DNA of 63,299 nucleotides, filler included, from Reticulomyxa filosa (lineage: Eukaryota > Protista > Foraminifera): NCBI GenBank assembly GCA_000512085.1. It is 23 parts of 23 records of this genome, joined end to end, with 100 filler letters (N's around TTAATTAATTAA, not from the genome) between each part and the next. Parts side by side here need not be neighbours in the genome. Positions count along the whole stretch, not along the records: positions 37,584 to 44,097 come from ASPP01005933.1; 22 more parts are not named here. One strand, 5' to 3'. Shown piece by piece: positions 37,584 through 44,097 of this stretch (within the stretch, counting starts at the first letter, position 1; each line of letters starts with the position of its first letter). The notes beneath the pieces are model-generated. The model was not told the DNA's origin. It ran no database searches and saw only the letters and a program-made list of their open reading frames with translations. The position numbers and the translations under genes were made by a program.

Positions 37584-38994
37584 AAGAAGAAGAGAATACT
37601 GATGAAAATGAAGAAGAACAAAGTGGTGTGAAAGGATTGAAAGAATTCAACCGATTGAAACGGGATTTGTTAGAAAAGGTCGGAAGTATTCAAAACTGGT
37701 GTTGGAAGCTGCACCGCATTCAACACGACTTGAACGACCAAGTTCAACAAGACAGTCCAAATGTGAGCAGTCCTAGCCATGGCTATGGGGATGATGATGA
37801 TGATGATGATGGCAATAGACACAAGGATATCCATGGGAATATGCGTGGCAATATAAACCATCGGAATCACACAACGAAGTTATCGGCGGTGATGCAACAG
37901 GTGTTTCCTTTCCTCATTGCTATGAGGGATTTGTTCTTTCGAAAGCAAAGTCAGATAGACAATGTTGACGAGTTTGAGTGCGTCCATTGGCTCACGCTGT
38001 TCATTGAATTGTTGCATGCGTGCGAGTTTTTCACGCTGAAGATTGAACAGGATATACACTATGGCAGATACAAAAGTAGTCGCTTTCCGTTTCACAGGTT
38101 TTTCAAACACTTTCCTTTTGCAGAGGAACACTTGACCCGCTTTGGAAAGCACTACGTCTATGGCTTGTTCTTTTGCTGCTCTTCCGTCGCACTACTCACG
38201 TACGGCCCTTGGAAGATCTCGCGTCCGCAATCGTGGTGGGGCTTTGGACCATTTGCTCGTCAACGCGTCATACAGCCTTTGGAAAATGCTTTCCATGGCA
38301 TTCGCGATGGTCTTCAAAATATCAGTGCCAATACCACTGTCGAGCAACACACCCCTATTGACAATGCGTCTTCACAAATCGAAAAAAAACGGTCGAACAC
38401 ATGCTAGTGAACGCTGGATATACCTCTGTGGAAGACTTGAATCATGACTTTGCCAATGAAGTCAAGGCTCCTGTGCGCAATTTCGTGTTCGGACATTTAT
38501 TCCAACATTGGCTTATCCAAATTCAACATTGGAAATATGAAATGGGCCGCATGAAACTCTCACTCGATACAATCAATGCCCAAAATCAAAAATTGTGGGC
38601 GTATGCTTTGGGTATTGTACCACTGTACTGGCTTGGCTATGGAGTTTTTAATACTTTGCAATGGGTAGTGTTGACATGTGCAAATGGGGCTCCTTGGTTC
38701 CGCGGCAGACAAGCTCAACTCTCCAAAGCCAAAATGCGTCGATGGTTACGCGAGCTACATAGTATTGTTGTTAAACATATCGGAAAAACAACCATCAGTA
38801 GCCATGATTGTGGGGTTTTTTTGCAAATTGTCAGAGAGATGAGTGCATCTGGTGTTGAAAATGCCAAAACTAAATTAATCACAGATGAAGAAAATAAGTG
38901 GCTCCAATTTGATTTGAATCATTTGGTCAGCCAGCAATTCACTGTACAACAATCCACTGCTTGGATTCAACGACTGGAAAGATATTACTTGTGA
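37584..38994 (+). CDS. NCA2-like (nuclear control of ATPase 2) protein, 5' truncated, one frameshift
   Basis: RVIQPLENAF, EVKAPVRNFVFGHLFQHWLIQIQHWK...LDTINAQNQ...LGIVP and the C-terminal DLNHL...QRL resemble the NCA2 family. The two ORFs join with +A in the A8 run at about 38382. Confidence 0.65.
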
Positions 38995-39414
38995 AGAGTT
39001 GTCCACAACCTTGTTTTCTTTCGGGTCTCCTTTTTTTTTAATAAACTTCTGCGATGGTTGCAAAAAAAAAAAACACAAAAGATGTGATAAAAATTTGGTC
39101 TTTGAGAATTATGACAAGTTTTATTTCATTTTGGAAACTGTCTTTTGTCTCTTCAAGACCTTTCATCTGCAGCATTTTTCTTTTGGAAAACCTCAATAAT
39201 CGAAGAATATTTTTTGCTCCATGCCACTTCTGTTTTTTTTACTTGCTTTTTGCTATTGATTTGCTCCCTTTTATTTGAAAAGTTGATATATGAATATTCA
39301 TCAATTTTAAATTTGTATAAAAATAGATTAGATGCAGAAGATGCTTATGTCAACACAAAACAATAAAAAATCGTAAACTGAAAGTCGAATAAAACCACGC
39401 AAACAACTTTCAAG

Positions 39415-40849
39415 TTATTTGGATTGGTCAATTGTTGACCATAACGAAACAACATCATTTACATGGCCATAAGCCTCTTCAAATTCTTGGACATTTATGT
39501 TTTCTCTGATATACCAGTCCAAGAATGCTTTTTGTGTATACATTTTGTTGAATTGGTTCGCTATTTTTTGGAAGGGGTGCTTCATGGACGTTTGATTACT
39601 AACCATAATAGCCTTAGAAAAGAGAGAGGGGGACTGTTGATCAACAAATATTTTCAACGCACTACTGTCAGAAAAAATTTTCTTGTTTATTAATTGTTGT
39701 TTGATCTCGTGTTTTGTCTGTTGCAATGTGATACCGTTCTCAAATCCATAATAACCACAAAGCATTCCTAATGACTTGAATGTACTTTTTTTTGGAGCAG
39801 TGATCAACCAGTTATCACTGGACAACAGTTGATCTGTTAGAATCGCTGTACTCTTTTTTTCTTGCTTTTTCTCAGCATCGACCGACAAAGAGCTATGGCT
39901 CAAAGTCAAATATTTAAGTATGGTCGAATGGTTTCGAGATGCGACGCAGTGTTGGTATATTGATTCCAAATCTGTAGTCTGGCAAAGAGTCGTCATTATG
40001 AGAGCAAACAAATCAGGCACAGTAGAGTTACTGGAAATTCGACGACTAATATTTGTTAAGGCCTCTATTTCCAAAAAAAATAATAAAAGAAATATGCAAT
40101 GCCAAGGGATATAACTAAGAATACATCAGCATGTAAACCAAAGTGAGAAAGGAAGTACGTAAAGTACCATAGTCAATTATGAATGATTGATGACACGTTT
40201 GAGACATAGAATGAATGGATAATACCGCGTCATACCATTGGAGATGGCTACTCGATGACGGCAGCATACTGCAACTTGTGCAAAGTACTTTGGGATACAT
40301 TTCGTGCAGCTGAACCATGACAGATGCCCCCAGACCCGATCCCAGGCCTTCTCCTAGGCTATTTATCACGAGGAATGACAATGGTGAACCGTTGGCTTCT
40401 ATTTCTTTTCTCACTAACTCCATGCTTTTCTTTACGTCTGAATTATTAAATGCTACTGGCCACAAAGCCTCTTCATCCAATGTCGTGATCAACCAATTGT
40501 GTTTCTCGATTATTGAGTCCTCCCGCTCCGATATACTGGTTACACAGATACTCCGTGGTGCCCATTCGTCCTTTCTTCTTTCTGTGTCTTTCACTGGCAC
40601 GAAGTAATCTTGCAAATAGTTGTTCAATTTATCTTGGATCGCATTGCTAACGCCGTTTCTATTTATCATCTGTTTCCAAAGCGGAGTTCCCAAGTCGCGT
40701 CCGATTTCCCCGAGCTGTAGACTTATGCAACTTCGGTGAACAAAAAATTTTTCAATCAGGTGGATGATATCTTGAGGGACAGACACATTATCTTTCTGCA
40801 TTTGTCTGCAGTAGTACATGACCAACATTTCACTTTTTACTTTTGACAT
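39415..40849 (-). CDS. Highly divergent tubulin-superfamily protein (beta-like C-terminus), 443 aa, 2 exons
   Basis: CISLQLG, WAPRSICV, NSLGEGLGSGLG, YDAVLSIHSM, DY|EAL across the intron at 40065-40167, and SNQTSM..F..IANQFNKMYTQKAFLDWY...EFEEA..VND. Confidence 0.85.
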
Positions 40850-41115
40850 ATTTCGTCGATATATTATTTAGAGGTAAAATAAAGCGATTTTCAATCAAAT
40901 TTTTTCTACTGCTTTGAGCCACCTTTTTCAAAGTTGAGCCAAAGTCTAAAGATGTATCTTTTTCTTCAGGTACAATGTGGTATCTGGCAAGAGCATCAAA
41001 GCTAAAACATAGAATTGCAGTCGTTTTGAGCGAGGAAAGATCAAACAATTTTTACTGCAAAAAAAGCAGACCTATTTGTTTTAAAGGTTTTGAATTTTGA
41101 CAATCAGTGCAAACC

Positions 41116-41645
41116 ATGGGCAGTATTCCATCAAATGTGGCAAATGAAGTGGCAAAAAGCATGTCCACAAACATGTCTAAGACCATGGAAGAAAACTCTC
41201 AACGTGCGGAGTAGTTCTTAGTCGGTCATACTTTTTGTTTTTCTTTTTAGAGCATGCATCCTAACAATACACTTCAGGAATGATTGAAAATCAAAAGCGA
41301 CTGGCAATGCAGCGCCGAGAAACGCAAATGGCTGTACAAACTGCATTTCGTCGAGACTTATTCTGGTGGTACACAAGCTTCACTTGCACAGTAGCAGGAA
41401 TGGGAACAATTGCATTTTTCAAGAAAGGTACACCAGTTGGCTTGATTCCGATGGTGCCTCTCTCGTTTCTTTGTGCATATCAATGGGATGGAGCGTACGG
41501 GAGTAAATTCAAACGCATACGTGCAGAGGCATCAAAAATTTTGGATGAAGAATGGAGAAAGGGAGAGGATAACAGATTTTTATTGCCAGATCATAACCTT
41601 CTTGTGTCTAGGGAAAAATATGATGAATACACAAAACGTACATGA
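41116..41645 (+). CDS. Plasminogen receptor KT (PLGRKT/DUF2368)-like membrane protein, 2 exons
   Basis: QKRLAMQRRETQMAVQTAFRRD.F.W and PMVPLSFLCAYQWDGAYGSKFKRIRAEA..ILDEE. Confidence 0.8.
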
Positions 41646-41995
41646 CAAATGGTTTAATGTACGACTTCATTTGGGATACCCTTAAGATCTTCAAAATTTT
41701 GTTTAATTTTCTACGAGTGTCTTCAAGCAAATAACACCTGTTTCTTGCTTTATCAAGCGTTTCTTTTTTTAATGTGACAAGATATGGATACCCTCCTCAT
41801 TTATCTCATGTAAATTTCTGTAAGACGCTTGGACGCTTTTTGTAATTGAGTAACCACATGTCTCACTAAATTATCAACAACATGTTAATTCTGCTCCAGT
41901 AAAACTAAACAAAAAAGAATGAGCGTCGACGTCAAAAAAAATCTTTTTAGATATCGTGAGGTTCACAATTTACATATTCGCCGATATTTATAGGA

Positions 41996-43042
<1,047 letters not shown>

Positions 43043-43936
43043 ACGTCAGATCACTATTGTTAGTTGTCGTGCTGGGGTGTTGTGTCTTTTTTTTTGTGCT
43101 TGCTTTGTTTGTTTTGCACTGTGGCGCATATTAAATGTAACACTAGGTGACAACAGAAAGATATAACTTTTTGTCCTGAAAGCAAACAAAAACGCACGAA
43201 AATTTCAAATTAACTCTTCTAACGCAAAATATATTTATTTGTTTGAATTGTCTTGTTTAAGTATTCTTTTTGTATCACTTTCCCTGATTAAATGATTTGA
43301 ATTACTGAGCCTTATTCAAATGATTTTCTCACTGAAAATTTTGAAGTAAAAATCATTTTTTTACTTTCATTGCCCGCTTGGTTGTGTAAAAAAAACTATG
43401 GTTGAAGAATATTTTTGTTATGGACGGTCGAGGAGAGATGTCTACTCAAATGGTTATACCACAAACAATGTCAGTGATAAAGCTATACTTGAAATTGAGA
43501 GAAATTGAAATTTATTAAGATATACAAACATAAAAAAACATTTCATGATATATCTGTCACAAGCACCATTCAATGGTTGCACTGAAAAACACAACCATGA
43601 TGTTGGTATGACAAATATAAATGCTTCTTTCTTTATCAAAGCATTTATTACATTATGTTGTAGAAAAGACTGAATACTAAAATAACACCTTATGAGATGA
43701 TCTTTTTTGTCCATAAAAAACAAACACTTGAACTAATTTTTCAAAAATCTAATATTGTAATCTTCTTAGAACGAATTTCTATCGACTTGAAGATAATTTT
43801 ATGTAATTAAATTGTATAAATAAATTTGAATGAATAGTTTAAAATACTTGACACTTCCCAATTACAATCAATCAAAAAATAAATATGATAATAACATTTC
43901 AGTGATGGAATTGATATCTCTTTAAAAAGGTGTAGG

Positions 43937-44097
43937 ACAAGCCCCTATTATACGTGGCTGAACTCTTACGGAACTGATGAGCTCCCTTTGGGTTAAACTT
44001 CTCCACAAACTTTCTTCACTTCTTGTTTTGGTCTTTCTTTACTTATTGAGTTATTCATTTTGGTTATTTAGTGTACTTTGTTTTACTGAAAGCCACT
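43937..44097 (+). repeat. Dispersed repeat family A, copy 2 (cut by contig end)
   Basis: Colinear with the reverse complement of 16064-16224. Confidence 0.85.

What the first reader, a model, noticed from the sequence alone, without database searches (positions are those of the whole stretch)
39415..40849. Pseudo-GTPase tubulin carrying the same N-terminal module as the WD40/Kelch family
Seen: an intact 443-aa two-exon gene whose nucleotide-binding loops are all altered. GQCGNQ reads GEIGRD, DLEP is lost, the GAGNNWAKG region reads EEALWPVA, and GGGTGSG reads GEGLGSG. The T7 loop is unrecognisable and there is no acidic tail, yet the outer C-terminal helices stay beta-tubulin-like. It starts with an extra EMLVMYYCRQMQKDNVSVPQDIIHLIEKFF, which aligns by eye with EMIIEHWIRSLSLKMGWIDDFNIIVTRYL at 23306. 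Known: foraminifera have unusual beta-tubulins and very fast microtubule remodelling. Inference: a new tubulin class in which the fold acts as a recognition or decoy domain on an F-box/SOCS-like adaptor. It might target tubulin, MAPs or motors for ubiquitylation, or cap polymers. This is my best candidate for an undescribed system.
Basis: partly seen in the sequence, partly recalled or inferred. Interest (0 to 1): 0.8.

Follow-up and report, generated by a model that had tools for sequence, protein, structure and literature searches.

The report
Degenerate tubulin with extra N-terminal module
This is an intact Reticulomyxa filosa gene for a tubulin-shaped protein that has lost every GTP-binding motif. 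It carries a conserved 35-40-residue add-on also found on a few other foraminiferal tubulins, so it belongs to an apparently undescribed branch of the tubulin family, not to an F-box-type ubiquitin adaptor.

Summary
On the minus strand, 40849..39415 encode a two-exon, 443-codon tubulin-fold protein (Pfam Tubulin 9e-19, Tubulin_C 1e-6; both halves fold confidently). T1-T5, N206, Y224 and N228 are replaced, T7 is cut to three residues, there is no acidic tail, and 38 residues precede strand S1. It is GenBank ETO29637.1 (RFI_07485, Reticulomyxa filosa), whose deposited model is mis-spliced.

The N-terminal module is real. A profile built from other proteins scores it 23.9 bits, against 0 of 5000 shuffles. 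It occurs on divergent beta-like tubulins of Bolivina argentea (two) and Nonionella stella, and on a near-canonical tubulin in a TARA scaffold. In a second Nonionella tubulin it sits as an insertion in the H1-S2 loop, which should lie next to the N-terminus in 3-D.

Those relatives keep most GTP motifs, so the R. filosa copy is the degenerate extreme. Pfam and PDB profile searches give no F-box or SOCS-box signal.

Best reading: a beta2-derived, nucleotide-independent, probably non-polymerising tubulin paralogue whose module acts near the lateral-contact face. Trees leave its position unresolved on a very long branch. Expression and any sharing of the module with WD40/Kelch proteins could not be tested.

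The parts
39415..40849 (-). Whole gene RFI_07485: two exons, 443 codons plus stop
   Evidence: P0001 = ETO29637.1 matches at 99% over the shared parts.
40168..40849 (-). Exon 1: N-terminal module plus the tubulin nucleotide-binding (Rossmann) domain, residues 1-227 and the first base of codon 228
   Evidence: Pfam Tubulin 9e-19. AF2 pLDDT 84.5, pTM 0.83. Foldseek top hits are beta-tubulin chains, TMq 0.70-0.72.
40736..40849 (-). N-terminal module, residues 1-38. Motif 1 is EMLVMYYCR (40805-40831); motif 2 is VPQDIIHLIEKFF (40742-40780).
   Evidence: A profile from Bolivina/Nonionella relatives scores it 23.9 bits, with 0 of 5000 shuffles reaching that. Helix 26-36 in the AF2 model. No Pfam or PDB family match.
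40694..40711 (-). Degenerate T1 loop, GEIGRD in place of GQCGNQ
   Evidence: Alignments.
40523..40543 (-). Degenerate T2 region, VTSISER in place of VDLEPGT
40451..40477 (-). Degenerate T3 loop, DEEALWPVA in place of GAGNNWAKG
40334..40354 (-). Degenerate T4 signature, GEGLGSG in place of GGGTGSG
40226..40261 (-). Shortened T5 loop, PSSSSHLQWYDA in place of PSPKVSDTVVEPYNA
40065..40167 (-). Intron, 103 nt, GT..AG, phase 1
   Evidence: The splice restores the tubulin DxEAL motif. The frame is closed if the intron is read through (ORF list).
39415..40064 (-). Exon 2: intermediate and C-terminal domains, residues 228-443 plus stop
   Evidence: Pfam Tubulin_C 1.1e-6. AF2 pLDDT 80.6, pTM 0.74, with the H7-H8-S7-H9-S8-H10-S9-S10-H11-H12 order.
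39937..40023 (-). H7 (Y224 is V, N228 is F), a T7 loop reduced to about 3 residues, and H8
39850..39900 (-). Region at the M-loop position, lysine/glutamate-rich and unlike beta-tubulin
39436..39597 (-). H11-H12, the best-conserved beta-like stretch; it is followed by a 6-residue non-acidic end

Best explanation
RFI_07485 is a real, selectively maintained gene for a tubulin-fold protein. It belongs to a small group of retarian (foraminiferal) beta-type tubulin paralogues, apparently undescribed, that carry a conserved 35-40-residue module.

In most members the module precedes strand S1. In one Nonionella tubulin it is inserted at the end of the H1-S2 loop. From tubulin topology, S1 and S2 are neighbouring parallel strands, so both positions should place the module at the same spot. 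That spot is beside the H1'-S2/H2-S3 pocket that forms the lateral protofilament contact. This step is inferred, not shown.

The group looks derived from the divergent beta2-type tubulin of Retaria. Within it the R. filosa copy is the extreme:
- all nucleotide-contacting loops and base-contacting residues are replaced, many by bulky, hydrophobic or acidic residues;
- T7 is deleted;
- the M-loop is unrelated and the acidic tail is missing.

Shown: the fold, the motif losses, the homology of the module and the maintained ORF.

Inferred: it no longer binds or hydrolyses GTP and does not build a normal lattice. It would act as a nucleotide-independent tubulin-shaped subunit or regulator, for example a lateral binder, edge or cap element, or a partner of the foraminiferal helical-filament form of tubulin. 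Contacts would be made through the module and the retained H11-H12 surface.
For: Fold and gene:
-.
- Identity with ETO29637.1 of R. filosa.

Module homology:
- Collinear BLASTP from the module into the tubulin body with Bolivina P0004.
- Leave-one-out profile scores are 23.9 bits for ours, 16.5 bits for TARA P0121 and 13.1 bits for the internal copy in Nonionella P0150. Each is reached by 0 of 5000 shuffles.
- Species labels.

Kinship:
- Holding ours with the Bolivina/Nonionella trio gives trees 15 and 25 log-likelihood units better than the free quick searches, and the clade is not rejected (p-AU 0.755 and 0.815).
- Ours lies outside the starred gamma, delta-like and epsilon-like clades.
- Both exons score higher against beta2-like tubulins (50.5 and 56.3 bits) than against canonical beta (34-38 bits).
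- At 58 sites that distinguish the two, ours matches beta2-like 12 times and canonical 5 times. The trio gives 12:7, 15:6 and 13:3. The tree neighbours P0006 and P0132 give 8:17 and 5:19.
- Ours and the trio also share loss of the otherwise universal W-x-P motif before S10 and a Cys in the ENTDE-equivalent position.

Relatives keep most motifs: P0004 has GGGTGSG, NWAKG and VVEPYNA; TARA L001 has all motifs plus an acidic tail.

Selection for an ORF: probability 4.9e-14 of staying open by chance, across a branch of about 2.6 substitutions per site.
Against:
- No R. filosa paralogue or close orthologue was found, so no dN/dS could be computed.
- Free tree searches place it on a 2.6-2.9 substitutions-per-site branch next to P0006, not with the trio, so clade membership rests mainly on the module and a few shared characters.
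- The 12:5 diagnostic-site bias is weak on its own.
- The 'beta2-like' label rests on one Nonionella member and a TARA member. It was not compared with the published R. filosa beta2 sequence.
- Loss of GTP binding is inferred from sequence only. Tetrahymena BLT tubulins with altered GTP sites still enter microtubules (PMC3382179).
- The 3-D position of the module is deduced from textbook topology. In the exon-1 model, residues 1-25 are low confidence.
Confidence: 0.55

Rival explanations
1. It is a specialised but still polymerising beta-tubulin isotype. It would pair with an alpha (alpha2) tubulin and enter a subset of microtubules or helical filaments, as the noncanonical beta-like tubulins of Tetrahymena do.
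For: - It is beta-derived.
- Relatives with the same module look polymerisation-competent (TARA L001).
- Tetrahymena BLT1 and BLT4 have substituted GTP sites and interaction surfaces yet enter nuclear microtubules (PMC3382179).
- R. filosa has many tubulin copies (25 alpha2, PMC5455982).
Against: The degeneration goes far beyond what the BLT abstract describes (multiple substitutions in GTP sites and interaction surfaces). All of T1-T5 plus N206, Y224 and N228 are changed, T7 is deleted, the M-loop is unrelated, and identity to any beta is only 22-32%. Both longitudinal faces are therefore altered.
Confidence: 0.15
2. It is a decaying or functionless duplicate, a relic on its way to becoming a pseudogene. 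The motif losses would simply reflect relaxed constraint.
For: - Extreme branch length.
- Loss of every catalytic motif.
- No expression evidence.
- Only one such gene was found for R. filosa.
Against: - 443 codons stay open at a chance probability of 4.9e-14, with canonical splice sites.
- The hydrophobic core pattern is good enough for confident AF2 models of both halves.
- The module motifs are retained.
- A branch of about 2.6 substitutions per site under neutrality would have produced stops and frameshifts.
Confidence: 0.12
3. One reading: the module is a degenerate F-box, SOCS or BC-box that recruits a cullin ligase, and the tubulin fold serves as a decoy or recognition domain for tubulin-binding proteins.
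For: - By eye, hP-x-D-I-I-x-L-I resembles the start of an F-box, and h-x-x-x-C-R ... hP resembles a BC/Cul box.
- The module size (about 40 aa) is similar to a SOCS box.
Against: - No Pfam hit in six modules at E<=10.
- No F-box, SOCS or VHL chain among PDB profile hits.
- The Cys is not conserved (S or I in relatives).
- After the one predicted helix (26-36) the tubulin S1 strand starts.
- The module also occurs inside a tubulin loop and on a near-canonical tubulin.
Confidence: 0.08
4. The module is a general-purpose docking, targeting or oligomerisation element of Foraminifera, used on many unrelated proteins. Its presence on tubulins would only reflect localisation.
For: - It is a short helical motif that can sit at two positions in the chain.
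Against:
- A word search from the Bolivina module found no other carrier.
- The ESM Atlas returned nothing.
Confidence: 0.1

Closest known systems
Retarian type-2 beta-tubulin (beta2; Habura 2005 and Hou 2013, as cited in PMC5455982 and PMC4990898)
   Same: A lineage-specific, strongly divergent beta-tubulin of Foraminifera and Radiolaria; R. filosa beta is only 45% identical to bovine (PMC4990898). Our protein and its module-bearing relatives share diagnostic residues with a beta2-like set.
   Different: As far as the papers read here describe it, beta2 is a working microtubule subunit, and the beta2-like sequences in hand keep the GTP motifs, T7 and an acidic tail. RFI_07485 has lost all of these, is only 25-32% identical, and carries the extra module.
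Noncanonical beta-like tubulins (BLT1-6) of Tetrahymena thermophila (PMC3382179)
   Same: Lineage-specific beta paralogues with substitutions in GTP-binding sites, interaction surfaces and targeting motifs.
   Different: BLT1 and BLT4 still enter specific microtubule arrays, and their abstract reports substitutions, not an added N-terminal module. Here the loops are lost outright, T7 is deleted and a module is added.
Delta, epsilon and zeta tubulins, the six-subgroup scheme (PMC4202323)
   Same: Minor tubulin classes with a tubulin fold and specialised roles.
   Different: Ours lies outside the well-supported gamma, delta-like and epsilon-like clades in every tree and scores near zero against them in the C-terminal half. 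No zeta or alpha references were available.
F-box and SOCS-box substrate receptors
   Same: A short N-terminal helical motif followed by a protein-interaction fold; there is a by-eye resemblance at hP-x-[DE]-I-I-x-x-I.
   Different: There is no profile-level similarity, only one predicted helix, and the module can sit inside a tubulin loop.
Pseudo-GTPases and pseudoenzymes in general (own knowledge; examples include CENP-M and the p190RhoGAP pseudo-GTPase domains)
   Same: The fold is retained while the nucleotide-binding motifs are lost, and the ORF is conserved.
   Different: Those are Ras-like folds. I know of no described tubulin-family case with every loop lost; this statement rests on my own knowledge plus a limited literature search.

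Membership tests
Tubulin/FtsZ superfamily (fold) | An N-terminal Rossmann-type domain plus an intermediate/C-terminal domain, recognised by PF00091 and PF03953 | tested here: met
   Pfam scores of 68.9 bits (cut-off 33) and 29.2 bits (cut-off 26.6). AF2 models with pTM 0.83 and 0.74. Foldseek probability 1.00 to tubulin chains.
Functional tubulin GTPase | Intact T1 GQCGNQ, T3 GAGNNWAKG, T4 GGGTGSG, T5 and base contacts N206, Y224, N228 | tested here: not met
   All are replaced: GEIGRD, DEEALWPVA, GEGLGSG, a shortened T5, and Y, V, F at the three base contacts. Biochemical binding was not testable.
Functional tubulin GTPase | A T7 loop (GxxNxD) that completes the neighbouring subunit's active site | tested here: not met
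   There is an alignment gap of about 8 residues and a 3-residue H7-H8 linker in the AF2 model.
Beta-tubulin class | Closest to beta among solved and library tubulins, and groups with beta in trees | tested here: inconclusive
   The best 60 PDB sequence hits for each exon are beta-tubulin chains, with one Asgard tubulin among the exon-1 hits. The C-domain falls in the beta-like assemblage with SH-aLRT 87 in the quick tree, but its position is unresolved in the careful trees. No alpha references were available.
Retarian beta2-type tubulin | Shares the derived residues of the beta2 clade and groups with it | tested here: inconclusive
   Higher phmmer scores than to canonical beta. Diagnostic sites 12:5. 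Not resolved in the tree. Not compared with the published R. filosa beta2 (CAA65332), which was not available to the tools.
Module-bearing retarian tubulins (group proposed here) | The conserved module: aromatic-x-R, then 7-12 residues, then h-P-x-x-I/V-I-x-L-I/C-x-x-F/Y | tested here: met
   Leave-one-out HMM score of 23.9 bits, with 0 of 5000 shuffles reaching it. Collinear BLASTP with P0004 from residue 13.
Module-bearing retarian tubulins (group proposed here) | Monophyly of the tubulin bodies | tested here: inconclusive
   The constrained clade is not rejected and has a higher likelihood than the free quick trees. The careful free tree pairs ours with P0006 at 91/79, a probable long-branch artefact. 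TARA L001 and P0023 do not group with the trio.
F-box proteins | A three-helix F-box of about 45 residues detectable by PF00646, PF12937 or related profiles | tested here: not met
   No hit at E<=10 in six modules. No F-box chain in the PDB profile search. One predicted helix only.
SOCS-box / BC-box proteins | A BC box (S/T/P)LxxxCxxx(A/I/L/V) plus a Cul box, detectable by PF07525 | tested here: not met
   No Pfam or PDB profile hit. The Cys is not conserved across the module alignment.
Gamma, delta, epsilon tubulins | Placement inside the class clade | tested here: not met
   Ours lies outside the starred gamma, delta-like and epsilon-like clades. The delta and epsilon labels rest on N-terminal signatures, not on named references.

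The most novel reading that the evidence does not exclude
Foraminifera have evolved a portable module of about 35 residues that has been grafted onto beta2-type tubulins at two different chain positions, the N-terminus and the end of the H1-S2 loop. Both positions converge on one 3-D site next to the lateral protofilament contact. The module would be a built-in lateral-contact or luminal modifier, tied to the unusual foraminiferal behaviours of helical filaments and very fast assembly. RFI_07485 would be a derivative of this group that has become a GTP-independent tubulin 'pseudo-subunit'.
Probability: 0.3. Interest if true: 0.75.

Novelty: new variant of a known kind. Interest (0 to 1): 0.6.

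Why it matters
Tubulins are among the most conserved eukaryotic proteins. Family members that keep the fold but lose every nucleotide-binding loop are, to my knowledge, not described.

Foraminifera are the organisms in which microtubules behave most unusually, with reversible helical filaments and extremely rapid assembly. So far these behaviours have been linked only to beta2 and alpha2 tubulin. A conserved accessory module placed beside the lateral contact, together with a nucleotide-independent derivative, gives concrete and testable candidates for regulators of that behaviour.

The result also corrects a mis-spliced GenBank model. It shows that the appealing E3-adaptor reading is not backed by profile searches.

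Tried and rejected
- Joined spliced protein. In one search the two exon rows of one alignment were only read side by side to count diagnostic columns.
It lies outside my piece and has no reference, so it was left out.

**Searches that found nothing**
- Word search with exon 1: no hit in the 125-397 aa range.
- Profile word search with the Bolivina/Nonionella alignment: swamped by canonical beta-tubulins, with no new family members.
- Word search restricted to the Bolivina module: only the query itself.
- ESM Atlas with the module: no usable hit.
- Pfam on isolated modules at E<=10: nothing relevant.
- PDB profile search with the module: noise only.
- Metagenome scan with TARA residues 1-75: 80 loci, all ordinary tubulin starts with spurious 5' read-through and no further module.

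**Tools unavailable**

**Other**
- Complex prediction with two copies of the module: no verdict (score 0.02). This counts neither for nor against self-association.
- The free-tree pairing of exon 1 with P0006, from an ORFan-rich ENA contig, was judged a long-branch artefact. P0006 is canonical-biased at diagnostic sites (8:17) and lacks the module.
- The GenBank model P0001 was rejected. It skips residues 1-64 and 229-257 of the homology-supported model, reads through the donor site, and borrows upstream antisense ORFs that overlap the neighbouring gene.
Full report
**1. What is in the sequence**

The piece 37584-44097 is a complete 6514-bp contig of Reticulomyxa filosa. The library protein P0001 (ETO29637.1, RFI_07485) is 99% identical to the window product and sits on a 6514-bp contig.

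On the minus strand an ATG at 40849 opens exon 1 (40849..40168); an in-frame TAA lies seven codons upstream. A 103-nt GT..AG intron (40167..40065, 30% GC) follows. Exon 2 runs 40064..39415 including the stop. The split codon gives E228, and the junction reads IIDY-E-ALTNIS, collinear with tubulin IDN-E-ALYDIC.

The deposited GenBank model differs and is worse. It skips residues 1-64, reads through the donor site, skips residues 229-257, and adds upstream antisense ORFs that overlap the first exon of the neighbouring gene.

**2. Observation check**

Exon 1 hits Pfam Tubulin (9e-19, residues 41-226) and exon 2 hits Tubulin_C (1.1e-6). Against PDB sequences, the listed top hits for both halves are beta-tubulins, apart from one Asgard tubulin for exon 1 (1e-12 and 1.4e-10).

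AlphaFold2 with small family alignments gives confident models:
- Exon 1: pLDDT 84.5, pTM 0.83.
- Exon 2: pLDDT 80.6, pTM 0.74, with the canonical order of secondary-structure elements.
- Foldseek puts beta-tubulin chains on top, TMq 0.70-0.72.

| Element | Canonical | RFI_07485 |
|---|---|---|
| T1 | GQCGNQ | GEIGRD |
| T2 | DLEP | TSIS |
| T3 | GAGNNWAKG | DEEALWPVA |
| T4 | GGGTGSG | GEGLGSG |

They also add a T5 loop shorter by 3-4 residues, N206 to Y, Y224 to V and N228 to F. T7 is reduced to a three-residue H7-H8 linker. The M-loop position holds an unrelated Lys/Glu-rich stretch, and the protein ends in TIDQSK with no acidic tail. H11-H12 is the best-conserved part.

The ORF is not chance. 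The probability of no stop in 442 codons at this composition is 4.9e-14, and the other frames hold 13-19 stops per exon.

**3. Relatives and the N-terminal module**

A full HMMER scan of 1.84 billion representatives with exon 1 found only four proteins below 1e-10. These were the gene itself, two duplicated beta fragments, and P0004.

Inspection of the hits showed the same extra N-terminus in several proteins (for the labels):
- P0004 and P0014, labelled Bolivina argentea in EukProt.
- P0033, labelled Nonionella stella.
- P0121, a TARA Oceans scaffold.
- P0023, from an SRA assembly, in weaker form.

The shared pattern is an aromatic residue, then x-R, then 7-12 residues, then h-P-x-x-I/V-I-x-L-I/C-x-x-F/Y.

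Leave-one-out profiles show this is homology and not composition. In each case below, 0 of 5000 shuffles reached the score:
- Ours against the Bolivina/Nonionella trio: 23.9 bits.
- The TARA copy against ours plus the trio: 16.5 bits.

BLASTP with P0004 runs collinearly from residue 13 of the module through the whole N-domain.

A second Nonionella protein, P0150, is a beta2-like tubulin with an acidic tail. It carries the same module as a 39-residue insertion at the end of the H1-S2 loop, directly before GGHYVPRS. The profile scores this copy at 13.1 bits, again with 0 of 5000 shuffles reaching it.

In the tubulin fold S1 and S2 are adjacent parallel strands (textbook topology, sheet order 3-2-1-4-5-6). 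The N-terminus and the end of the H1-S2 loop should therefore lie side by side. Both would sit next to the H1'-S2/H2-S3 pocket that receives the neighbour's M-loop. This 3-D argument is inference; I had no structure jobs left to test it.

These species' published sequence resources are transcriptomic (PMC8153729). The relatives are therefore presumably expressed, with the caveat that field samples can contain other organisms.

**4. Where it belongs**

Trees were built separately for the two halves, with the module columns excluded. Ours sits on a very long branch, 2.6-2.9 substitutions per site for exon 1 and 1.5-1.8 for exon 2. It always falls outside the well-supported gamma, delta-like and epsilon-like clades. 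The delta-like and epsilon-like labels rest on N-terminal signatures; only two gamma references carried names.

The Bolivina/Nonionella trio is strongly monophyletic (99-100). The position of ours is unresolved:
- The careful exon-1 tree pairs it with P0006 (91/79).
- Trees constrained to ours plus the trio were 15 and 25 log-likelihood units better than the free quick searches, and the clade was not rejected (p-AU 0.755 and 0.815).

A set of tubulins abundant in marine metatranscriptomes starts MVREI and ends ...EYQDKQDA. It includes Nonionella P0150 and the TARA gene, and is about 59-67% identical to canonical beta. I call it beta2-like. This is a label of convenience, because I could not compare it with the published R. 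filosa beta2, which is 45% identical to bovine beta (PMC4990898).

Several observations tie ours to this set:
- Both exons score higher against it (50.5 and 56.3 bits) than against canonical beta (34-38 bits).
- At 58 sites that separate the two groups, ours matches beta2-like 12 times and canonical 5 times. The trio gives 12:7, 15:6 and 13:3. P0006 and P0132 are canonical-biased at 8:17 and 5:19.

The second point argues that the P0006 pairing is long-branch attraction.

Ours and the trio also share two derived characters: loss of the otherwise universal W-x-P motif, and a Cys in the ENTDE-equivalent position.

I conclude, with moderate confidence, that the gene is the most derived member of a beta2-derived, module-bearing retarian group.

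**5. Degeneration is specific to this copy**

The relatives keep far more of the GTP machinery:
- P0004 keeps GGGTGSG, NWAKG, VVEPYNA, DNEALY, Y224 and N228.
- P0014 and P0033 are intermediate.
- The TARA gene keeps all motifs, T7 (GKLNGDLRKM), WIPNN and a long acidic tail.

The module therefore predates the loss of the GTP pocket and is compatible with an ordinary-looking tubulin.

**6. The adaptor hypothesis**

Three findings weigh against the F-box/SOCS reading:
- Pfam finds no F-box, SOCS-box or any other family in the modules of six proteins, even at E<=10.
- A five-sequence profile of the module against all PDB chains returns only noise.
- In the exon-1 model, residues 1-25 are low confidence and only residues 26-36 form a helix before S1 begins.

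Together with the internal copy in P0150 and the near-canonical TARA carrier, this makes that reading unlikely. I could not test whether the module also occurs on WD40/Kelch proteins.

**7. Mechanism**

Shown: the tubulin fold, loss of all nucleotide and T7 motifs, a retained module, retained H11-H12, and a maintained ORF.

Inferred: the protein no longer binds or hydrolyses GTP. With both longitudinal faces and the M-loop altered, it does not form a normal lattice subunit. It most likely acts as a nucleotide-independent tubulin-shaped partner or regulator, with the module working at the lateral/luminal face.

Rivals:
- A specialised polymerising isotype, by analogy with the Tetrahymena BLTs (PMC3382179).
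- A decaying duplicate. The open frame argues against this.
- The E3-adaptor model.
- A general docking module.

**8. Novelty and limits**

The literature I could search describes alpha2 and beta2 of Retaria (PMC5455982, PMC4990898) and the six tubulin subgroups (PMC4202323). It describes neither a module-bearing group nor a tubulin with all GTP loops lost.

Limits of this analysis:
- No orthologue for dN/dS.
- Unresolved tree placement.
- No alpha or zeta references.
- No full-length fold.
- The complex job on module self-association gave no verdict.

**9. Context**

The neighbours are ordinary intact genes:
- An NCA2-like gene (to 38994, + strand).
- A PLGRKT/DUF2368-like gene (41116-41645, +, two exons).
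- A multi-exon Rab5-like GTPase (41996 onward, +).

Noticed in passing
window 40115-41186 (minus strand) versus P0001: The GenBank/UniProt model of RFI_07485 (ETO29637.1, 456 aa) is mis-spliced. It starts in antisense ORFs at 41186-40830 that overlap exon 1 of the neighbouring plus-strand gene. It omits the module, S1, T1 and H1 (residues 1-64), reads through the donor into GTLRTSFLTL, and omits residues 229-257.
   Followed up: yes
P0150 residues 64-102 (Nonionella stella, EukProt): The same module of about 35 residues (GYIRQ...IPSDVKLLCRDY) is inserted in the H1-S2 loop of a beta2-like tubulin, not at the N-terminus. The profile scores it 13.1 bits, with 0 of 5000 shuffles reaching that.
   Followed up: partly
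L001:225-1031 and L001:1063-1884 (TARA scaffold, sample ERZ28654238): A two-ORF, intron-split tubulin gene. Its N-terminus carries the module, followed by a further spacer of about 12 residues. The body is otherwise near-canonical beta2-like, with intact GTP motifs, T7 and a long acidic tail.
   Followed up: partly
P0183, P0186, P0189-P0267 (JGI metatranscriptome contigs of about 1.5 kb): A very abundant, coherent group of beta-like tubulins starting MVREI(V/L)H.QVGQCGNQIGN and ending ...KGEGMDEMEFQEADKNVRDLITEYQDKQDA. They are about 59-67% identical to canonical beta and are labelled only 'tubulin beta'. A Nonionella sequence falls inside the group, so it may be the retarian beta2 type. This was not verified against named beta2 sequences.
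   Followed up: partly
L002:6001-7359 (P0006, 99-kb ENA contig): An intronless divergent tubulin with a GGGLGSG T4 variant, in a gene-dense region of mostly ORFan genes plus EF-hand proteins. The organism is unknown. It attracts our long branch in the trees.
   Followed up: partly
window 41116-41211 and 41280-41645 (+): A two-exon gene for a PLGRKT/DUF2368-like small membrane protein (Pfam 2.4e-27 on exon 2). Exon 1 begins MGSIPSNVANEV.
   Followed up: partly
window 41996-42811 and beyond (+): A Rab5-like small GTPase split into at least four short exons (Ras family hits on each), with AT-rich introns that hold long T or A runs.
   Followed up: partly
window 37584-38994 (+): An NCA2-like (ATP synthase regulation) gene cut by the left edge of the piece. 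Two ORFs (to 38407, and 38401-38994) overlap in different frames, which suggests a short intron or a frameshift near 38400. There is a poly-Asp run near 37790-37810.
   Followed up: no
P0002, P0003, P0164, P0178, P0187, P0188 (library proteins): Many database 'tubulins' among the top hits are assembly or annotation artefacts with internally duplicated segments. This inflates their scores through two matched stretches.
   Followed up: no
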